A stretch of DNA of 63,511 nt, filler included, from Octopus bimaculoides (lineage: Eukaryota): the NCBI RefSeq assembly GCF_001194135.2. It is 10 parts of 10 records of this genome, joined end to end, with 100 filler letters (N's around TTAATTAATTAA, not from the genome) between each part and the next. Parts side by side here need not be neighbours in the genome. Positions count along the whole stretch, not along the records: positions 10,930 to 18,024 come from NC_069006.1; 9 more parts are not named here. One strand, 5' to 3'. Below the pieces are notes generated by a model. That model did no database searches. It saw only the letters and a list, made by a program, of their open reading frames with translations, and had not been told where the DNA came from. This document shows, piece after piece, positions 10,830-18,024 of the stretch (the first letter of the stretch is position 1; each line of letters begins with the position of its first letter). The position numbers were made by a program, and so were the translations under genes.

Positions 10830-11044
10830 NNNNNNNNNNNNNNNNNNNNNNNNNNNNNNNNNNNNNNNNNNNNTTAATTAATTAANNNNNNNNNNNNNNN
10901 NNNNNNNNNNNNNNNNNNNNNNNNNNNNNAATTACACCACAGTTATTTTGTGATCTTTGCTACCTTGGTTTCTATTAACCTATTTATTCTATCCGAATTA
11001 TTATTTATTAGGATAAAATAAATACATATAATTATATATATATA

Positions 11045-11297
11045 GGTAATCTTCAAGTTTAGGGGGATAAAAAAAATAAATAAAAATATTCAAGGGAAAT
11101 AACTGAACGACTTACCAGTATTATCCGTTTTCTTCTAGCTGTTTATAAATAAATCACACCCTAACCCTAACGTCAATCAAATCACGTGTGTGATTTATTT
11201 ATAAACAGAGATGTACGGAGAATACTGGTAAGACGTTCAGTTACTTCCCTTGAATATTTTTATTAATTTTTTTATCCCCCTAAACTTGAAGATTACC
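11045..11297. mobile_element. 253-bp foldback MITE with long TIRs (MULE- or Merlin-like)
   Basis: Begins GGTAATCTTCAAGTTTAGGGGGATAAAAAAA and ends TTTTTTTATCCCCCTAAACTTGAAGATTACC. Inverted similarity extends about 115 bp per arm. Flanks are compatible with a 9-bp TSD ATATATATA (11036-11044 / 11298-11306), but this is ambiguous within (TA)n. Confidence 0.85.
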
Positions 11298-11753
11298 ATA
11301 TATATATATATATTTAATGATCTGAGGTCTTAGCCATCGCGACCAAGGCCATGCTGGAGCAAAAGCCACTAATATAGTGTATAGCAACTTGGATTTTTTT
11401 TACTGGAGAGGCGTTAGACCTCCCTTGCATCTGACCAGAATGTAATGGAAACCAGTTCGTTTTCAATCGCATAAAACAACAGCAACTTCTCAGGGAATTA
11501 AAAAGAAATATCGTTTGTATTTATAAAATAAAATACAGTTCTGCAGAGAACGGTGTCTGATAAGTCCCCCTCTTTAAATTGTAGGTTTTGAATGATATCA
11601 GAAATAATTGTTAGTCAGGTGAAGTGGAATCCTAGAAGGACAGATTACGTTATGGATAGGGGCGAATTTGGAAAGGTTTAACGTACCTACCATTGTTGTT
11701 CGATTTCTTGATATTTTAATGAAAGAAGAAGAGAGAATAGGGACGGAATGTGG

Positions 11754-12338
11754 TTAATCTGTGGCTCGAAGTGTCACCTTTTTCTTCAAGGTGGAATAAA
11801 AACTTGAAGTCTGTTCTATGGAAATCTTTTTGCTTTCCTTAGAAACTTGTGCATTTATATCAGGTGATAATGATGAGATGTCACATTTTTCTTTGTTCCT
11901 TTCATAAACAGTGAGTAAACTTTTGATGAAAACAGAACCACTTTCCTCAGTTCGGAAAGCCTTGCTTTCTGGAACAGTGGCAAAAGTAACATATAGATCT
12001 GGAACATTGAAATATTGCTTCACGTCTTCCTTTTCTGAATTAGTTTCACCACCTTTGCTACATTCCGCGTCCTCTTTGACTTGAGGTTCACTTTGACAAG
12101 TATTTTTATTAGTTGGACAAGCATCGGTATCTTTCGCGACATTATTCTTATTAGGTTTAATTTGACAAGTATTTATATAAACGAATTTTGGTTTGTCGTT
12201 CAACTGAGTACTCTTTACAATTATATTAATAGTGGAATAAGATGATTCCTTATCATCAATTCCAATAATATTCCTTATTGAACATAACGAAACAATCTTC
12301 ACAGGCTGTATTATCTGCCTTTTCTTTTACAATTAATA
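11754..12338 (-). pseudogene. 5'-truncated, frameshifted paralog of the CARD-caspase at 15506-16471 (3' part of p20 plus p10)
   Basis: Strong similarity to the intact copy (YFNVPxLYVTFATVPE..AFR..ESGSVFIKSLLTVYERNKExCDISSLS.DIN.QVSKES ... STLKK.V.LRATD*). The 22 nt encoding LMSHGVLG (15913-15934) are replaced by 5 nt (12275-12279): a net 17-nt loss that shifts frame and removes the catalytic His. No CARD-encoding sequence is visible upstream. Confidence 0.85.
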
Positions 12339-12799
12339 TTGTAAAAAAAAAAAAAAAACTTTAACACGAAATAACTTTAAAATATATAACCTTTTCTCAA
12401 CAACACTAAGAGTAAAAGATGTTTTATATGACACATTCTACCAGTGTCCCAAGTTTGAAAGTGTTTCGTTTGAAAACAATGGTGTCCGCCAAATCAGAAA
12501 GATCCCACAAACTGTTTGTTATTTTTTTTTTTCAAAGAACGTTATTCACAAACATTGTTCCTGTGCATGTTTTCACATTGTATTTTCATTTTCCATGTTT
12601 TGCATTTAATTTGATGTGCATAGCTGTGTAGCTAAAGGTTTACTGCGCCAAACTCTGCAATTATATTCTATATCTATCATGATGCATGTATTGCTTTTTC
12701 TATTTTACTACCTGTCTGCAAGCACATGTTTCTGTTACCTCGATGTGTTTCGTATCTGCCCTGGATCGCTACATTCTGCTTATCGACTGTTCATCTGAG

Positions 12800-13755
12800 A
12801 GGGGAGTTATGTAGTGACCCCTGGCGGCTACGACGACAAGCGAAAAACAACTTCAAGACACAGTCCTAGAGGCGCAGAATTAATTAAGCAGGAAATAGAT
12901 AGATTACTTTCAGAGGACGTAATTCAGGGAAGCCGCATACCCACGCAAAGAGATGAGCATCAAAACAGTATTTTCCCATCTGCTCAACCTCTTTCCATTA
13001 TTTGGGTCATCAAGTTGCATCCACTCTGACAGAGAAACCCAATTTGATAATAAGAAGCTCCAGGACTTCTTTCACGCTAACGGGTCAATAGAAACTAGAA
13101 CATCTCCCTATCGACCTCAAAGCAACAGTCAATGTGAAAGGAAGACCATAAATCTAGCACTTAGTTCCCTACAACCAGATAAAGGATAATGGTTGACAGC
13201 TCTTCCTATGGTACTATCTGCCATGAGAGGACTCCTCTGTACAGCTACCAACACAAACCCTCATGAGCGAATGTTTAAATTTTCAAGATCATCGACAGTG
13301 CGAACCATTCTACCTGAATTTCTCCAGAATACCGGAAGCACAATACTGCATCGTTGGCATGTCAGAAATAAGGGGGATCCACTTGTAGAAAGTTGAATTG
13401 TTGGAAACGGGCGAATAGATACAATGTCAACACACAATCTCGCTCCAGCGGGAGAATCTTTCAATGAAGGAAGCAAAGATAACACACAAAAACGACCAGG
13501 GCTAACTAGACAAACTGTGTTCGATACAGAAAAAGATCCACGAATAATAAATCAACAAGGAAGTGACCCTGACTATACACCAATAGTCCGGCACGTGGAG
13601 ACGTGAGCTGATTAGCAAACTAGCGAAGAGGACCCGAAAGAGAATAGTACAGGCAACAAAACTTGCGAAAAATACCTGAACGAAAATAATACAAGTAACA
13701 AAGCGACAACTATTCAAGGACAAAAAGTAACGAGGAAATTGAGATCAGGACGCTT
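12800..13755 (+). mobile_element. Internally deleted Ty3/Gypsy pol remnant (RT start fused to integrase core and tail)
   Basis: TTSRHSPRGAELIKQEIDRLLSEDVIQGS resembles the RT N-terminus KSRRYS..FI..EI.RLL.EG.I.PS. RTSPYRPQSNSQCERK, WLTALPMVLSAMRGLLCTATNTNPHERMF and HVRNKGDPLVE correspond to integrase core and C-terminal motifs. Multiple stops. Confidence 0.85.
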
Positions 13756-13857
13756 TTTTTTTCTCTCAGGGGCTATACGCTTTGAATGCACCGTAACTAA
13801 CTTTTCACTCAGCATGGAAGATTGTTATGAATTTTAATATCCTATTATTAATTCCTT

Positions 13858-14232
13858 TAGCTTGCTTACCAACCACATGGTTTTGGGTTCAGTCCCACTG
13901 CGTGGCATCTTGGGCAAGTGTCTTCTACTATAGCCTCGGGCCGACCAAAGCCTTGTGAGTGGATTTGGTAGACGGAAACTGAAAGAAACCTGTCGTATAT
14001 ATGTGTGTGTATATATATATATATATGTATGTGAGTTTGTCCGCCCAACATCGCTTGACAACCGATGCTGGTGTGTTTACGTCCCCGTAACTTAGCGGTT
14101 CGGCAAACAAGATCGATAGAATAAGTACTAGGCTTCCAAAGAATAAGTCCTGGGGTCGATTTGCTCGACTAAAGGCGGTGCTCCAGCATGGCCGCAGTCA
14201 AATGACTGAAACAAGTAAAAGAGTAAAAGAGA
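13858..14232 (+). mobile_element. tRNA-derived SINE, family B (near full length)
   Basis: gggttcagtcccactgcgtggcatcttgggcaagtg head, internal (TA/TG)n, ccccgtaacttagcggttcggcaaa core and gactgaaacaagtaaaagagtaaaagag tail. Recurs at least 10 times in the window. Confidence 0.9.
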
Positions 14233-14490
14233 ATATATAAAAATATAGATGTCTTATTTTGTATTGAGTACAAAACTGCGGCAGTGTCGAATGACGTCGA
14301 CAGCTGGATGTTGTCTTCACCAAATATCAAACAACGCGTCTTAATTGTTGGACAGCTGTGGTTAACGGATTAGACGGCGATTAGATTAGAGTTTGAAGGA
14401 AAACCTTCTTTGAACTAGTTTATGACGATAGTTTTATAAGTATGTAATGATCTGAGATCTAACTCGCCTCACATTCTATATTCTTTGCTC

Positions 14491-15159
14491 GGATCTAGTT
14501 TGTTTGGTTGCCAGCATATCAAAAATTTAAGTTCAGCCAAATTTTTAAAAATTTGGCACAATAACATACTTTTCCAAACTGAATTGCTGGCGTTATTGAA
14601 ATTTTTCCAGGAAATTTTCTTTAAAAAGTTATGGACGTTTAAAGTTTGATCCTTTTCACCCAGTCAGGAAACAGAATATGGAAGCTGTCACTTTGTCAAC
14701 TATAGGCAAATCAAATTTTGCTCTCCGCTCGCCATATAATCCCTCATAAGTTTCTTTATTTTTTGCTATTTTCAGGAAAAAAAATGCGAATATGTATTCC
14801 ACTCATCGGAATTCATGCAATTGTCCAAAAATAAAACAAAAAAATTTTTGGGTGCATGATTTAAGGCCTGTTTGGCTGCTATTTTTAGCACATCTGACAA
14901 CCACTTCAATGAGTGGAAAATATTTGTCAATACGTGCTTTGTCGCACACAAAGGAATTCTCATGTCTCGCTTGTTACAATGGAAACAGGTATGAATGTGT
15001 TTGTGGTTTACGATTGGCTAAAAATACCCAAAATTTTCAATAACACTTTATTGATTTATAGCGAAAATAATTTTCACGTAGTTCATTACAATGAATATGA
15101 AATCAATTCGAACAGAATTGATGCCGGCGACCAAACATACTAGATCCCCTCCGCTTCCT
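14491..15159. mobile_element. Non-autonomous DNA element with about 30-bp inverted ends (Kolobok-like right end)
   Basis: ggatctagtttgtttggttgccagcat (14491) is the inverted match of atgccggcgaccaaacatactagatcc (15121-15147). The right end is ...CTTCCT followed by TTAA (15160-15163). The outermost left terminus is not recognisable. Confidence 0.55.
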
Positions 15160-15505
15160 TTAAGCCAACCAAGGCCATGCTGGGGCAAAAGCTCTATTGA
15201 TACTTTATAGCACCTTGGATGTTCTACTGCTATAGTTACCTCCCTTGCATCTGACCAAAAATCGTTTGTATTTATAAAATAAAAGAAAGTTCTGTAGAGA
15301 ATGGTGTTTGATAAAGCCTCCTCTTTAAATTGTTGGTTTTGTACCGAAATCAGAAATAATTATTAGTCAGGTGAAATGGAATCGAAGAATAACAGATAAT
15401 GTTGTGGATAGGGGCGAATTTGTAAAGGTTTAATGTACATACCATTGTTGTTCGATTTCTTTATATTTTAATGAAAGGAGAAGAGAGAATAGGGACGGAA
15501 TGTGG

Positions 15506-16471
15506 TTAATCTGTGGCTCGAAGTATCACATTTTTCTTCAAGGTAGAAAAAGAACTTGAAGCCCGATCCTCAGAAATCTGATTGCTTTCCTTAGAAACTT
15601 GTGAATTTATATCAAGTGATAATGATGAGATGTCACATTCTTCTTTGTTCCTTTCATAAACAGTGAGTAAACTTTTGATGAAAACAGAACCGCTTTCATC
15701 AGATCGGAAAGCTAGGTTTTCTGGAACAGTGGCAAAAGTAACATATAGATGTGGAACGTTGAAATATTTCTTGATATCTTTCTCAGTAGGATTAATTTCA
15801 CAAGTATTTACATAAATGAGTTTAGGTTTGTTTTTCAGGTGAGCACTCTTCTTTAGTGTTTTGTTAATAGAGGAATAAGGTAATTTCTCACCATCAATTC
15901 CAACAATATTCCCTAAAACCCCATGTGACATCAAGAACATAACGAAACAATCTTCACGGGCTGTACTTTCTGCAGCTTCTTTTAGAATTATATCTTCCAT
16001 TTCCTCGGCCGTTTTATTAGAATAAAGATGAACATCGAAATTGAAATCAGTGAAAAGTTTCGTAATACCCTCCACATCCTTTTCACTTCCGAACCTTTCC
16101 TGGTACTTCTCCTCATCGTCAAATTTCCCATTATTTATTAATATAACACGGCCATGTGTTTTGAATTTCATCGGGTAGACTGTCTGCTCGTCTAATAGTT
16201 TGAGTATTTCATTATGTTCTGACTTTTTCAAAGCCGACACAAATTCACGGGACCCATCTGGTAGTTTCTTATGTAGGATATTGTGTAACCGTCGCTTCTG
16301 ATTGTTAGAATCTCTTTCAGACATTATTCCATCTATATTGTTCTCAGTCAATAAACCATTGGCTAAAGCTTCATCTAAAAATGAATCTATATCGTCCAAA
16401 TATTTTACAAAATCAACTCGGAGTTTTTGAAATTGATTCTTAGAAATATAGTACAGTTGTTCAGCATTCAT
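15506..16471 (-). CDS. Single-exon CARD-domain caspase-like cysteine protease (clan CD, C14A-like), 321 aa, with atypical NTCEI active-site motif
   Basis: Open 321-codon ORF with an in-frame upstream TAA (16493-16495). Residues about 10-95 fit a CARD (LRVDFVKYLDDIDSFLDEALANGLLTE ... EFVSALKKSEHNEILKLL). Caspase motifs: YPM..HGRVILINN, RFGSEKD (R126), CFVMFLMSHG (H183), KPKLIYVNTC (C224), LYVTFAT.P..AFR (R256), GSVFI, STLKK. Confidence 0.93.
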   Translation of the reverse strand: MNAEQLYYISKNQFQKLRVDFVKYLDDIDSFLDEALANGLLTENNIDGIMSERDSNNQKRRLHNILHKKLPDGSREFVSALKKSEHNEILKLLDEQTVYPMKFKTHGRVILINNGKFDDEEKYQERFGSEKDVEGITKLFTDFNFDVHLYSNKTAEEMEDIILKEAAESTAREDCFVMFLMSHGVLGNIVGIDGEKLPYSSINKTLKKSAHLKNKPKLIYVNTCEINPTEKDIKKYFNVPHLYVTFATVPENLAFRSDESGSVFIKSLLTVYERNKEECDISSLSLDINSQVSKESNQISEDRASSSFSTLKKNVILRATD

Positions 16472-17689
16472 GTTTATATAAAACTTTGAATATTACAAGA
16501 ATGTGAAACTGTAAATAATACCAATTATTTCATGAGAAAAGAAAGCCAAACTGTCCACCTCTTAACCTCCTGGTTTACGAAGATAAACGTTTCGGGTTAT
16601 GTAGTCAGGTTACTTCGAAGACTTCAGGAACTAAGTCCAGTTATTTACAAACACATATATTTCAATGGCTCTTGTTAAATTTCCTTGACTCAATTAAATT
16701 TCCTTCAAAGTTCTGGATAGTTTTCCTCTGATGACATAAATTAGAGTTATTTTTTCTTTAGAAACCAATAACAACGAAATTACAAATATTTAAAGTTATC
16801 TAATTCCAGCGATTAAATTGTTTCACCAGAATACTTTTAGAAAATGTGCATTTGACATAGTTCTAACTGATTCTGTCCCATTGAAAACATTTGATCTTCT
16901 TGAGTCAGAGAAATATGCACCATTAAAATGAAGAGAAAGAAGGAAGTTATTTCTTACAGATTTTATTTTCCTGTTAATTCGATGTTACGGTCAGAATACA
17001 AAATGCTGTAGTAGTCGGCTGTTTTACAGTGCTAAGGGGAAAATAATAAAGACAAAACGAGCGCACATTTAGTAACAACTGAGTCTGTTGCAGATGTTAG
17101 GAAGAGGTGGTTTGCTAAAAATGCTATAACGTGCAGCAGCGTCTGAAAGCGAAAACGATTGTTCCCGAATATTCTGAGAGGATTCGAATTGTTGGATTGT
17201 TGAATGTGGATCGGAGTAGAATGGCAAATGAATTAGTTTACTTCTGTTAACTTGTATTTTACCCAAAAATGTTGAGTTAAACAATAGAACTTATCTAAGC
17301 TTAGCGGTTGACATTAACAAATTTCTAAGTCCTAATCCCAATAACGATGGAAAGGATCTGGTAGAAAAATCGAGGCTAGAGTTTCGATTTCCAGCTATGG
17401 ATCGAAGAGACGATTTCCATTATAATTTTGCTTGGTGATGATGAAAAGCTCGCTGGTTTATCCTTTATGAAGAATTACAAGGAGTTACAAGCAAGTAAAG
17501 TTGTGTAATTTCAAACAATCGAATGTCACCATTGTCCACACAGCGGAAGTTGAAACTATTATTCTGTTGTATCTCAAATCTGTAATCGGTTTTGCTCTTC
17601 ATGCTCTAGATTTCTTGCAATTTGGAGATTAACCTTTGTATACTTTTATAGTTAAATTTGACATATTGAGATACATATATCCTACTTTC

Positions 17690-18024
17690 AAAGAATTGAT
17701 AATTGTGTTTTTTCAGATCTGATCATGATTTCTTCAAGTAGACACAGATGTGTGAATAATCTTGATGGCTTCTATTATATCTGTGGCTCCTTCACACTTA
17801 TCCGTGAAAGGCGCAAAACCACATCACTTGTGACTCAAGCTCATAAAGCCTATTTTGGAATTCTCCGAGTTGATCAACACAAAACATGGGGCCCTCATAT
17901 TGTTTGTCATAACGGTGAGGAAATGCTTCGTGACTGGACAGCACAAAAAGCTTTGGCGAGAAAAATAGGCTTAAAGTATCTTATTCCAATATTCCTTCAA
18001 CAATGAGACCTATTGTGCACTCTG
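17690..18024 (+). mobile_element. DNA transposase N-terminal fragment, Chapaev3/CMC-like
   Basis: MISSSRHRCVNNLDGFYYICGSFT ... AYFGI..DQHKTWGPHIVC..L.DWT, followed after a deletion and frameshift by KNRLKVSYSNIPSTMRPIVHS. An acceptor-like ttttttcag precedes the ATG. The family assignment is from motif recall. Confidence 0.65.

What the first reader, a model, noticed from the sequence alone, without database searches (positions are those of the whole stretch)
15506..16471. Intact CARD-caspase with a rewritten active-site pentapeptide (NTCEI instead of QACRG)
Seen: an uninterrupted ORF with CARD, SHG (H183), KPKLIYVNTCEI (C224), and arginines at the two positions that form the Asp-binding S1 pocket (R126 in RFGSEKD, R256 in AFRSDESGSVFI). 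Established: metazoan caspases carry QACxG; the Gln contributes to S1, and the Arg-Gly after the Cys organises the active-site loop. Here Q is N, A is T, R is E and G is I, while the dyad is kept. The paralog also has NTC(Q), so the change predates the duplication and is unlikely to be a sequencing error. Inference: a lineage-specific initiator-type caspase family with altered activation or specificity, or a cFLIP-like regulator that kept its Cys. It is the best candidate here for an undescribed cell-death or immune component.
Basis: partly seen in the sequence, partly recalled or inferred. Interest (0 to 1): 0.75.

Follow-up and report, generated by a model that had tools for sequence, protein, structure and literature searches.

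The report
Octopus CARD-caspase with altered active site
This is an intact octopus gene for a cell-death-type protease (a caspase with a CARD recruitment domain) from an octopus-only, tandemly duplicated gene family whose active-site motif has drifted from the animal-wide QACxG to N-T-C-E/Q-x; the family is already annotated but has not been studied.

Summary
Window 15506-16471 (minus strand) is an uninterrupted 321-codon ORF encoding CARD + caspase, with H183, C224, R126 and R256 where stated and NTCEI in place of QACxG.

The piece comes from Octopus bimaculoides (CM046626.1). The gene sits in a roughly 45-kb array of at least six intron-less paralogs plus fragments. Every member, including one in Argonauta, has Asn for the S1 Gln and no Gly after the Cys (NTCQx, NACRV, NSCQV). 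A squid-type relative still has QACQP.

The gene is under purifying selection: dN/dS is 0.24 against the intact O. vulgaris ortholog, with no indels. A deep-alignment AlphaFold model (pLDDT 93) matches caspase-7/3/8/9 (TM 0.81-0.89).

Some paralogs carry Cys->Tyr, and those forms appear in a published O. vulgaris skin-mucus proteome. The O. vulgaris/sinensis orthologs have R256->P.

Best reading: a probably active, CARD-recruited protease of a fast-diversifying octopod family that mixes live and dead members. Whether it is an enzyme or a decoy, and what it cleaves, is untested.

Databases call the family "caspase-7/3/8-like", and one phylogeny mentions divergent Octopus CARD-caspases that may belong to it. 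I rate it a new variant of a known kind, of moderate interest.

The parts
15506..16471 (-). Complete single-exon coding sequence of the CARD-caspase (321 aa plus stop).
   Evidence: ORF list. Identical to a called gene on O. bimaculoides CM046626.1. dN/dS is 0.24 against the O. vulgaris ortholog, with no indels.
16193..16432 (-). CARD prodomain, residues 14-93.
   Evidence: Pfam CARD at 27.2 bits, above the 23.9 cut-off. The AlphaFold model shows six helices with a broken first helix and pLDDT 92-98. The CARD alone has no significant sequence match in the PDB.
15575..16153 (-). Caspase protease domain (p20-like plus p10-like), residues 107-299.
   Evidence: Pfam Peptidase_C14 at 113 bits. PDB phmmer hits: coral PaCasp7a 1e-22, caspase-7 1e-21. 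Foldseek TM 0.81-0.89 to caspase-7/3/8/9.
16094..16096 (-). Codon of R126, the first S1 arginine (Arg179 in caspase-1 numbering).
   Evidence: Alignment to caspase-7. Arg in 20 of 20 octopod family members and 82 of 85 other caspases.
15920..15928 (-). S182-H183-G184: catalytic His and oxyanion-hole Gly.
   Evidence: Invariant across the 22-sequence Octopus alignment.
15794..15808 (-). Active-site pentapeptide N222-T223-C224-E225-I226, in place of QACxG.
   Evidence: Family motifs are NTCQ[VFIA], NTCE[IA], NAC[RQE][VA], NSCQV and NTYQ[FI].
15752..15793 (-). Short loop after the Cys (residues 227-240, NPTEKDIKKYFNVP), equivalent to the L2/intersubunit linker. It contains TEKD232.
   Evidence: There are 31 residues between C224 and R256, against a median of 54 (minimum 27) in 87 other caspases. 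Some paralogs carry a roughly 39-aa insertion here.
15704..15706 (-). Codon of R256, the second S1 arginine (Arg341 in caspase-1 numbering).
   Evidence: Alignment. Arg in 19 of 20 family members. It is Pro in the O. vulgaris and O. sinensis orthologs.
16509..16520 (-). tattatttacAG: a possible 3' splice acceptor 38 nt upstream of the ATG, which would mean a 5'-UTR intron (inference only).
   Evidence: Sequence. The motif is conserved in the O. vulgaris ortholog's upstream region. No transcript data were available.
11754..12336 (-). Truncated paralog (pseudogene fragment). It holds only the equivalent of residues ~161-321, has the LMSHG segment deleted with a frameshift, and keeps YINTCQI and the long linker insertion.
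   Evidence: tblastn and three-frame translation. The 3' half plus 234 nt of 3' flank is 87.7% identical to the intact gene.

Best explanation
The ORF is a functional, single-exon gene for a CARD-caspase. It belongs to an octopod-specific family that has been amplified in tandem and turns over by birth and death of copies.

Most likely mechanism (inferred): the CARD recruits the protein to a CARD-bearing sensor or adaptor. Proximity-driven dimerisation then switches on a His183/Cys224 protease. This protease still binds an acidic P1 residue through R126 and R256. Its S1 pocket and post-Cys loop are remodelled: Asn for Gln, no Gly, and a loop much shorter than in most related caspases. P1 and subsite preference and the need for linker cleavage therefore probably differ from canonical caspases.

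Cys->Tyr paralogs in the same arrays probably act as cFLIP-like partners or inhibitors.

The biological setting is probably stress, immune or epithelial cell-death signalling rather than core developmental apoptosis.

Shown here: gene integrity, domain make-up, fold, family distribution, purifying selection, and protein-level expression of paralogs.
Inferred: catalytic activity, specificity shift, CARD partner and physiological role.
For: Integrity and domains:
- Intact ORF with CARD and Peptidase_C14 above Pfam cut-offs.
- High-confidence AlphaFold model (pLDDT 92.9, pTM 0.82) matching caspase-7/3/8/9 at TM 0.81-0.89 and E about 1e-22.
- Dyad, oxyanion-hole Gly and both S1 arginines present and nearly invariant in the family.

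Selection:
- dN/dS is 0.24 against the intact O. vulgaris ortholog (CARD 0.16, p20 0.23, p10 0.38).
- 42 amino-acid differences are observed, against 66 +/- 4 expected from 93 random substitutions. Only 2.9% of such simulations keep the ORF open.
- No indels in 966 nt of CDS, against 5 indel events in 799 nt of upstream flank.

Family:
- At least six apparently full-length intron-less copies within about 45 kb in O. bimaculoides, a similar array in O. vulgaris, and an intron-less copy in Argonauta hians.
- Catalytic-core windows have the lowest paralog dN/dS (0.27-0.43). CARD residues 31-60 run at about 1.0-1.2, which fits partner diversification.

Expression:
- Paralogs P0179/P0180 (NTYQF), P0005 and P0012 (NTCQF) are listed in the O. 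vulgaris skin-mucus proteome. P0180 and P0179 have 14 and 12 peptides (PMC11431876 supplements).

Precedents:
- Dronc (PFCRG) cleaves after Glu as well as Asp, and the first pentapeptide residue is part of the S1 pocket (PMC2180229).
- Coral CARD-bearing DXXDases are proposed to be activated on death platforms (PMC7586219).
Against: - No transcript or peptide evidence for this particular gene. Its 90% cluster holds only the genome copy, and its orthologs' accessions were not found in the parts of the proteome supplements held here.
- The O. vulgaris and O. sinensis orthologs carry R256P, so Asp/Glu binding through that arginine is dispensable in at least one lineage.
- Paralog dN/dS is high (0.45-0.81). 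Neighbouring copies are frameshifted or truncated.
- The post-Cys loop is at the short end of the range seen in related caspases (31 residues against a median of 54). If uncleaved, it may not support the canonical active loop bundle.
- Activity, specificity and the CARD partner are all untested. Krasovec et al. did not detect Apaf-1 in molluscs (PMC10959488).
Confidence: 0.55

Rival explanations
1. Pseudo-protease or regulator. The protein folds as a caspase and keeps its Cys, but it works mainly as a CARD- or dimer-interface scaffold. It would activate or block catalytic paralogs, as cFLIP-L, caspase-12 and the CARD-only decoys do.
For: - R256P in the O. vulgaris and O. sinensis orthologs, with the ORF still intact and equal numbers of derived changes in the two lineages (21 vs 20).
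- Cys->Tyr paralogs exist in O. bimaculoides and O. vulgaris, and the O. vulgaris ones are listed in the mucus proteome.
- The pentapeptide lacks the Gln, Arg and Gly of QACRG, and the loop after the Cys is short.
- The p10 part evolves faster than the rest (dN/dS 0.38).
Against: - His, Cys, oxyanion-hole Gly and both arginines are all retained in the O. bimaculoides protein.
- His is in 20 of 20 and Cys in 18 of 20 family members.
- Catalytic-core windows are the most constrained.
- A pure scaffold would not need them.
Confidence: 0.25
2. An ordinary Asp-specific apoptotic caspase. The database label 'caspase-7-like' would be essentially right, with a CARD in front as in cnidarian CARD-caspase-3/7. 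On this view the pentapeptide changes are functionally neutral drift.
For: - The best sequence and structure matches are effector caspases-3/7 and coral PaCasp7a.
- Both S1 arginines are kept.
- Asn for Gln is conservative and also occurs in bivalve CARD-caspases with NACRG.
- Non-Gly fifth positions occur in about 20% of related caspases.
Against: - Identity to any non-cephalopod caspase is at most 34%, and no orthology to caspase-3/7 is evident.
- Tandem amplification, pseudogenisation and dead members are not typical of core executioners.
- Squid and octopus have separate QACRG caspase-3/7 genes (PMC9389742; a distinct 'Caspase-3' A0A7E6EUP3).
Confidence: 0.2
3. A recently duplicated, unexpressed copy on its way to becoming a pseudogene. 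The open frame would be a survivor in a birth-and-death array.
For: - The neighbouring copy in the window is a truncated fragment.
- O. vulgaris has two frameshifted duplicates of the ortholog.
- No transcript-derived copy of this protein is in the collection.
Against: - dN/dS is 0.24.
- The amino-acid differences are 6 SD fewer than the neutral expectation, and only 2.9% of neutral simulations keep the ORF open.
- No indels in the CDS, unlike the flank.
- Intact orthologs exist in two species.
Confidence: 0.08

Closest known systems
Coral CARD-containing caspases PaCasp7a / OfCasp3a (PDB 6WI4; PMC7586219)
   Same: Both have an N-terminal CARD fused to a protease domain most similar to effector caspases-3/7. 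PaCasp7a is the best PDB sequence hit (1.2e-22) and a good structural match (TMt 0.82). The coral enzymes are proposed to be activated on death platforms through the CARD.
   Different: Only 28% identity. The octopus protein has NTCEI in place of the usual QACxG, a shorter post-Cys loop than most related caspases, an intron-less gene in a tandem array, and no biochemical data. The coral enzymes are shown to be DXXDases.
Drosophila Dronc (PFCRG), and C. elegans CSP-1/CSP-2
   Same: These are long-prodomain (CARD) caspases whose pentapeptide departs from QAC at the first two positions. For Dronc this goes with cleavage after Glu as well as Asp (PMC2180229).
   Different: The substitutions differ (P-F versus N-T). 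Dronc keeps Arg-Gly after the Cys and is a single-copy apoptosome initiator. No specificity data exist for the octopus family.
Squid (Euprymna scolopes) CARD-caspases 'EsCasp9/EsCasp10' with QACQP (PMC9389742), and the unnamed 449-aa relative P0028
   Same: P0028 is the closest relative outside octopods: 35% identity, CARD plus caspase, QACQP, and no Gly at position 5. The squid paper singles out a Euprymna-specific CARD-caspase group with this same motif.
   Different: These proteins keep Gln-Ala, have a post-Cys loop 11 residues longer, and P0028 has two CARD-like repeats. That P0028 comes from a squid is inferred from the shared motif only; the source run's organism is unknown to me.
Lophotrochozoan 'caspase-Y' and bivalve 'caspase-2-like' CARD-caspases (PMC10959488, PMC11463336, PMC7836458)
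   Same: These are lineage-specific, duplicated CARD-caspases of molluscs in a phylum where Apaf-1 was not detected. The bivalve members are reported to have 'very different p20 motifs'. Two bivalve CARD-caspases in my search have NACRG. Krasovec et al. list two divergent O. bimaculoides 'caspase-Y1/Y2'.
   Different: I could not confirm that Y1/Y2 are members of this array, because the supplement is not held. In their whole-family tree those octopus sequences fall outside the CARD-caspase clade. No paper I found describes the N-T-C-Q/E-x motif, the intron-less array or the Cys->Tyr members.
Vertebrate inflammatory caspase locus (caspase-1/4/5/12 with COP/ICEBERG/INCA decoys) and caspase-8/cFLIP
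   Same: This is an analogy of organisation: tandemly duplicated, fast-evolving CARD-caspases that mix active enzymes with catalytically dead or truncated paralogs acting as regulators. Vertebrate caspase-1 proteins are the only non-octopus hits of the word-indexed search.
   Different: Only 24-29% identity and no orthology. The vertebrate genes have introns and QACRG. The regulatory role of the octopus dead paralogs is an inference from my own knowledge of the vertebrate systems.

Membership tests
Caspases (MEROPS C14A; Pfam Peptidase_C14) | Caspase/haemoglobinase fold with p20-like and p10-like halves | tested here: met
   Pfam at 113.3 bits over profile positions 2-216 of 233. AlphaFold pLDDT 92.9. 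Foldseek TMt 0.81-0.89 to caspase-7/3/8/9 over about 228 columns.
Caspases (MEROPS C14A; Pfam Peptidase_C14) | Catalytic His (SHG) and Cys dyad | tested here: met
   H183 and C224 align with the catalytic residues of caspase-7. His is in 20 of 20 and Cys in 18 of 20 family members.
Caspases (MEROPS C14A; Pfam Peptidase_C14) | QACxG active-site pentapeptide | tested here: not met
   The gene has NTCEI. Only the Cys matches. The family shows N[TAS][CY][QER][VIAF].
Caspases (MEROPS C14A; Pfam Peptidase_C14) | S1 pocket made of Arg179, Gln283 and Arg341 (caspase-1 numbering) | tested here: inconclusive
   Both arginines are present (R126, R256). The Gln is replaced by N222. The orthologs in O. vulgaris and O. 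sinensis have R256P.
Caspases (MEROPS C14A; Pfam Peptidase_C14) | Cleavage after Asp | not testable with these tools
   Needs a recombinant enzyme assay.
Caspases (MEROPS C14A; Pfam Peptidase_C14) | Intersubunit linker with an Asp processing site | tested here: inconclusive
   The loop is short and contains TEKD232. That Asp is not conserved among paralogs, which have SEKE[DY], DKKN and similar.
CARD-caspases (initiator or inflammatory type) | N-terminal CARD six-helix bundle | tested here: met
   Pfam CARD at 27.2 bits, above the 23.9 cut-off. The model shows six helices with a kinked first helix and pLDDT 92-98. The domain is too divergent for a PDB sequence hit.
CARD-caspases (initiator or inflammatory type) | Orthology to caspase-2, caspase-9 or caspase-1 | tested here: not met
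   The exhaustive search gives only 7 representative clusters below 1e-30. Four are octopod (three Octopus, one Argonauta), one is from an unidentified run, and two are mite proteins. All other caspases have at most 39% identity with no subfamily preference. No tree was built.
CARD-caspases (initiator or inflammatory type) | Recruitment and activation by a CARD adaptor platform | not testable with these tools
   Only a hint: a 490-aa CARD protein lies next to the Argonauta gene.
Lophotrochozoan caspase-Y (Krasovec et al. 2023) | Placement inside the caspase-Y clade in a CARD-caspase phylogeny | not tested
   The paper names two O. bimaculoides caspase-Y sequences. Their accessions are not held, and I built no phylogeny.
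Pseudo-caspases (cFLIP-like) | Loss of the catalytic Cys and/or His | tested here: not met
   Both are retained in this gene. The feature is met by paralogs P0008, P0009, P0021, P0179 and P0180 (NTYQ) and by the distant relative P0135.
Effector caspases-3/7 (the database label) | Short prodomain, QACRG, orthology to caspase-3/7 | tested here: not met
   The gene has a CARD prodomain, NTCEI, and 26-28% identity to human caspase-3/7.

The most novel reading that the evidence does not exclude
Octopods run a private CARD-caspase system. It would be an intron-less tandem array, possibly born from a retrocopy, whose members carry an Asn-for-Gln S1 pocket and a shortened activation loop. Those features would give them non-canonical P1 specificity (Glu as well as Asp, as in Dronc) and activity without linker cleavage. 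Cys->Tyr paralogs would act as built-in regulators, diversifying CARDs would couple members to different sensors, and the system would operate in skin and mucosal defence.
Probability: 0.15. Interest if true: 0.7.

Novelty: new variant of a known kind. Interest (0 to 1): 0.45.

Why it matters
Cell-death and innate-immune signalling in cephalopods is almost unexplored. Molluscs appear to lack Apaf-1, so how their CARD-caspases are activated is an open question.

This family offers a compact natural experiment. It comprises a set of recent paralogs (at least six apparently full-length in O. bimaculoides, more in O. vulgaris) that vary exactly at the active-site pentapeptide (NACRV, NACQA, NTCQx, NTCEI, NTYQx), the post-Cys loop (short, or about 39 aa longer), the L3 substrate loop and the CARD surface.

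Testing them side by side would show how far the QACxG motif can drift while activity is kept. It would show whether Asn at the S1 position shifts P1 preference. It would also show whether dead paralogs regulate live ones.

There is a practical point too. The octopus 'caspase-3-like' protein proposed as a welfare biomarker in skin mucus belongs to this family and is not a true caspase-3, which changes how that marker should be read.

Tried and rejected
- The first AlphaFold run used only the 22 Octopus sequences and gave a poor model (pLDDT 66, p10 below 50), with weak Foldseek matches. It was replaced by a 107-sequence alignment.
- A second word-indexed homolog search with a cephalopod profile added nothing beyond Octopus and vertebrate caspase-1.
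- The CARD alone has no significant sequence hit against the PDB.
- The contig for O. sinensis isoform X6 (P0004) is not on record, so the O. sinensis ortholog could not be examined at the DNA level.
- I tried to identify Krasovec's 'Octopus caspase-Y1/Y2'. The supplement is not held and the preprint version does not mention octopus.
- A literature search for NACRG, NTCQ, NACQG and QACQP returned only the squid paper, for QACQP.
- I searched the mucus-proteome supplements for the accessions of the query's orthologs and of several short-form paralogs and found none. Some files were cut when stored.
- I considered that the 28-residue block around the Cys, identical between the two species, signals special constraint. 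I rejected this as not significant: such a run is expected about once by chance at 13% divergence, and a 31-residue identical run also occurs in the CARD (my calculation).
- I considered that copies c4 and c5 in O. bimaculoides are truncated pseudogenes. I rejected this because their breaks coincide with assembly gaps.
- I considered acceleration in the O. vulgaris lineage after R256P. It is not seen (21 vs 20 derived changes).
Full report

Yes. The piece 10930-18024 contains one long ORF, 15506..16471 on the minus strand, 321 codons from an ATG. From the piece's base composition, an open frame of this length is expected about 1e-6 times.

Pfam finds Peptidase_C14 (113.3 bits, residues 107-299) and CARD (27.2 bits against a cut-off of 23.9, residues 14-93).

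- SHG at 182-184
- KPKLIYVNTCEI at 215-226
- R126 in RFGSEKD
- R256 in AFRSDESGSVFI

In the phmmer alignments to human caspase-7 and the coral caspase PaCasp7a (PDB 6WI4), R126 and R256 align with the two arginines that bind the P1 aspartate. N222-T223-C224-E225-I226 aligns with QACRG.

**2. Where it comes from**

The protein is identical to a gene called on Octopus bimaculoides chromosome record CM046626.1 (assembly GCA_001194135.2). The reverse complement of the piece equals L001 8448-15542.

The coding sequence has no intron. A pyrimidine-rich ...tttacAG sits 38 nt upstream of the ATG and is conserved in O. vulgaris. This suggests a 5'-UTR intron, but that is inference only.

**3. The family**

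The word-indexed search found 21 related protein clusters. All are from O. bimaculoides, O. sinensis and O. vulgaris (56-88% identity) and are named caspase-7-like, caspase-3-like or caspase-8-like. After them come only vertebrate caspase-1 proteins at about 1e-9.

The exhaustive HMMER search of 1.8 billion representatives found 3087 caspases at E up to 0.001, but only seven below 1e-30:
- three Octopus representatives;
- Argonauta hians 'caspase-7-like' GAB1602177.1 (44% identity);
- an unnamed 449-aa protein, P0028, from sequencing run SRR27666087 (35% identity);
- two mite proteins.

I stitched four overlapping loci into one stretch of the O. bimaculoides chromosome (8.836-8.900 Mb). About 45 kb of it holds these copies:

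| Copy | Motif | Notes |
|---|---|---|
| c1 | NTCQI | P0006 |
| c2 | NTCEI | the query |
| c3 | (fragment) | the truncated paralog in the window |
| c4 | NACEA | N-terminus hidden by an assembly gap |
| c5 | NTYQI | has an internal assembly gap |
| c6 | (fragment) | reverse strand |
| c7 | NACQA | 321 aa, intact |
| c8 | NACRV | P0010 |

The stretch also has 16 kb of assembly gaps, which could hide more copies.

O. vulgaris has a similar array of intron-less genes of 321, 360, 211 (twice) and 370 aa. The Argonauta gene is also intron-less, and no second copy lies within 10 kb of it.

**4. The motif is a family trait**

I aligned 107 sequences (A3). All 20 octopod sequences have Asn at pentapeptide position 1. 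Position 2 is T (16), A (3) or S (1). The Cys position is C (18) or Y (2). Position 4 is Q, E or R. Position 5 is V, A, I or F, never Gly.

Among the 87 other caspases, the counts are:
- QACRG 37
- QACQG 17
- NACRG 3
- NSCRG 1
- D[TAS]CRG 4
- non-Gly at position 5 in roughly a fifth

Two of the NACRG proteins are bivalve CARD-caspases: Mytilus coruscus 'CASP9' and Pinctada 'Caspase-2'. Each single change therefore has precedent, but the combination is octopod-specific in this sample.

P0028 has QACQP. The same motif is reported for a Euprymna-specific group of CARD-caspases (PMC9389742). The likely path is therefore QACQP-like in decapodiforms to N[ST]CQx in octopods.

The stretch between the Cys and R256 is 31 residues, against a median of 54 (minimum 27) in the others. 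A subset of Octopus paralogs has a 28-39-residue insertion there.

**5. Fold**

A shallow alignment gave a poor model. With the 107-sequence alignment, AlphaFold gives pLDDT 92.9 and pTM 0.82. The model has a six-helix CARD with a broken first helix, followed by a complete alpha/beta protease domain.

Foldseek matches caspase-7, -3, -8, -9 and PaCasp7a at E about 1e-22 to 1e-20 and target TM-scores of 0.81-0.89. I could not read coordinates, so no active-site distances are reported.

**6. Is it a working gene?**

The intact O. vulgaris ortholog (L002 3397-4362; CAI9741477.1) is 86.9% identical in protein and 90.4% in DNA. It also keeps NTCEINPTEKD.

Evidence for coding constraint:
- Nei-Gojobori dN/dS is 0.24 (dN 0.065, dS 0.272). 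By region it is CARD 0.16, p20 0.23, p10 0.38.
- Ninety-three random substitutions would give 66 +/- 4 amino-acid changes; 42 are observed. Only 2.9% of such trials keep the frame open.
- The CDS has no indels. The 799 aligned upstream columns have five indel events at similar substitution identity (88.7% vs 90.4%).

This is clear purifying selection on the protein.

Among paralogs dN/dS is 0.45-0.81. In 20-codon windows pooled over paralog pairs:
- the catalytic core is lowest, 0.27-0.43 around SHG and KPKLIY;
- CARD residues 31-60 reach 1.0-1.2;
- residues 271-300 reach about 0.95.

Column entropy peaks in CARD 41-60, in the pentapeptide and linker (221-240), and in the L3 loop (251-260). 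That pattern fits diversification of partner and substrate surfaces. It is not a formal test of positive selection.

**7. Evidence that cuts the other way**

- The O. vulgaris and O. sinensis orthologs have R256->P. Comparison with the rest of the family shows this is derived in that lineage. The second S1 arginine is therefore dispensable there.
- There is no excess of derived changes in that lineage (21 in O. bimaculoides, 20 in O. vulgaris).
- O. vulgaris also carries two duplicates of this ortholog with a frameshift near codon 210.
- Several paralogs have Cys->Tyr: P0008, P0009, P0021, P0179 and P0180.
- A distant relative from another sequencing run, P0135, has lost both His and Cys.

**8. 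Expression**

I have no transcript data for this gene, and its 90% cluster holds only the genome copy.

For the family there is protein-level evidence. The O. vulgaris skin-mucus TMT proteome (PMC11431876) lists:
- A0AA36BVN1 and A0AA36BW82, with 14 and 12 peptides;
- A0A7E6FPB4, 'caspase-3-like isoform X5', proposed there as a welfare biomarker;
- A0A7E6FRF3.

The cluster look-up shows these are P0180, P0179, P0005 and P0012 of this family. P0179 and P0180 read VNTYQF, so they are Cys->Tyr forms. Peptides may be shared among paralogs, so this is family-level evidence only.

**9. How it most likely works**

Shown: a CARD, a complete caspase fold, the dyad, the oxyanion-hole Gly and both S1 arginines, all under purifying selection.

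Inferred: CARD-mediated recruitment and proximity-induced dimerisation, as in other CARD-caspases. The closest solved relative, coral PaCasp7a, is a CARD-bearing DXXDase proposed to be activated on death platforms (PMC7586219).

The first pentapeptide residue lines the S1 pocket. Dronc (PFCRG) cleaves after Glu as well as Asp (PMC2180229). A shift or broadening of P1 and subsite preference is therefore a reasonable expectation for Asn222. The loss of Arg-Gly and the short loop suggest a different activation geometry.

Acidic residues are always present in the short loop (TEKD, SEKE[DY], NED). D94 at the CARD/protease boundary is invariant in Octopus and is Glu in Argonauta. These are possible processing sites, but that is speculative.

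The mix of Cys and Tyr members in one array recalls caspase-8/cFLIP and the caspase-1 locus with its decoys (my own knowledge). It suggests that the dead members regulate the live ones.

**10. Comparison with what is known, and novelty**

The protein is a caspase by fold and dyad. It fails the QACxG signature and is not an ortholog of caspase-3/7, -2, -9 or -1.

Mollusc CARD-caspase diversification is known:
- caspase-Y (PMC10959488, PMC11463336);
- bivalve caspase-2-like proteins with 'very different p20 motifs' (PMC7836458);
- two divergent O. bimaculoides CARD-caspases noted in passing.

I found no description of this motif, of the intron-less tandem array, or of the Cys->Tyr members.

I therefore rate it a new variant of a known kind: real, evolutionarily constrained and uncharacterised, but not a new category. 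Interest is moderate (0.45). It would be higher if a P1 shift or a live/dead regulatory pairing were shown.

Noticed in passing
window 11754-12336 (-): Truncated paralog. Only the equivalent of residues ~161-321 is present. The LMSHG segment is deleted with a frameshift, and YINTCQI and the long linker insertion are kept. Its 3' half and 234 nt of 3' flank are 87.7% identical to the intact gene, while the part upstream of the Cys is only 73% identical. This suggests a recent partial duplication or gene conversion.
   Followed up: yes
window 12953-13189 (+): Degraded retroelement integrase fragment (Pfam rve, E 8e-4, 20 bits, below the cut-off). It lies in the higher-GC block (about 12.4-14.4 kb) upstream of the truncated paralog, where that paralog's missing 5' half would be expected.
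   Followed up: partly
L002 10001-10962 and 16422-17383 (O. vulgaris OX597839.1): Two near-identical duplicates of the query's ortholog, each with a frameshift near codon 210, just before the catalytic Cys. They are annotated as 211-aa 'caspase-7-like' proteins (CAI9741479/80). They could be pseudogenes or CARD-plus-partial-p20 decoys.
   Followed up: partly
L002 3397-4362 (O. vulgaris) and P0004 (O. sinensis): The orthologs keep NTCEI but have Pro in place of the second S1 arginine (AFPTDESG instead of AFRSDESG). This state is derived relative to the rest of the family.
   Followed up: yes
P0179, P0180, P0008 (O. vulgaris, 370 aa); O. bimaculoides copy c5 (P0009): Paralogs with Tyr in place of the catalytic Cys (NTYQF/NTYQI). 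P0179 and P0180 are among the caspases listed in the published O. vulgaris skin-mucus proteome. The 'caspase-3-like isoform X5' biomarker of that study (P0005) also belongs to this family and is not a true caspase-3.
   Followed up: yes
P0003, P0004, P0005, P0012 (O. sinensis RefSeq isoforms X1-X6): The RefSeq isoforms of one O. sinensis locus combine the CARD of one paralog with the protease part of another. For example, X6 is a foreign CARD joined to the query's ortholog from residue ~96. This could be read-through splicing between tandem genes or a gene-model artefact. It was not checked against reads.
   Followed up: no
L006 1-207 (Argonauta hians BAAFZT010000022.1): A called 490-aa protein with a CARD (and no caspase domain) ends about 10 kb upstream of the Argonauta family member. 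It is a possible adaptor or partner candidate.
   Followed up: no
Linker insertion of long-form paralogs (e.g. P0003 ...YVNTCQFKHEKDN...STKENTCRSETQ...; window fragment ...YINTCQIKPNKNN...NKNTCQSEPQ...): The roughly 39-aa insertion after the catalytic Cys contains a second 'NTC[RQ]S' string. It may be a partial internal duplication of the active-site segment.
   Followed up: no
window 13617-13702: Two copies of a 42-nt tandem repeat (77% match) inside the retroelement-like block.
   Followed up: no
L008 20920-20963 (O. bimaculoides): A phospholipase A2 (Pfam Phospholip_A2_2) gene flanks one end of the caspase array.
   Followed up: no
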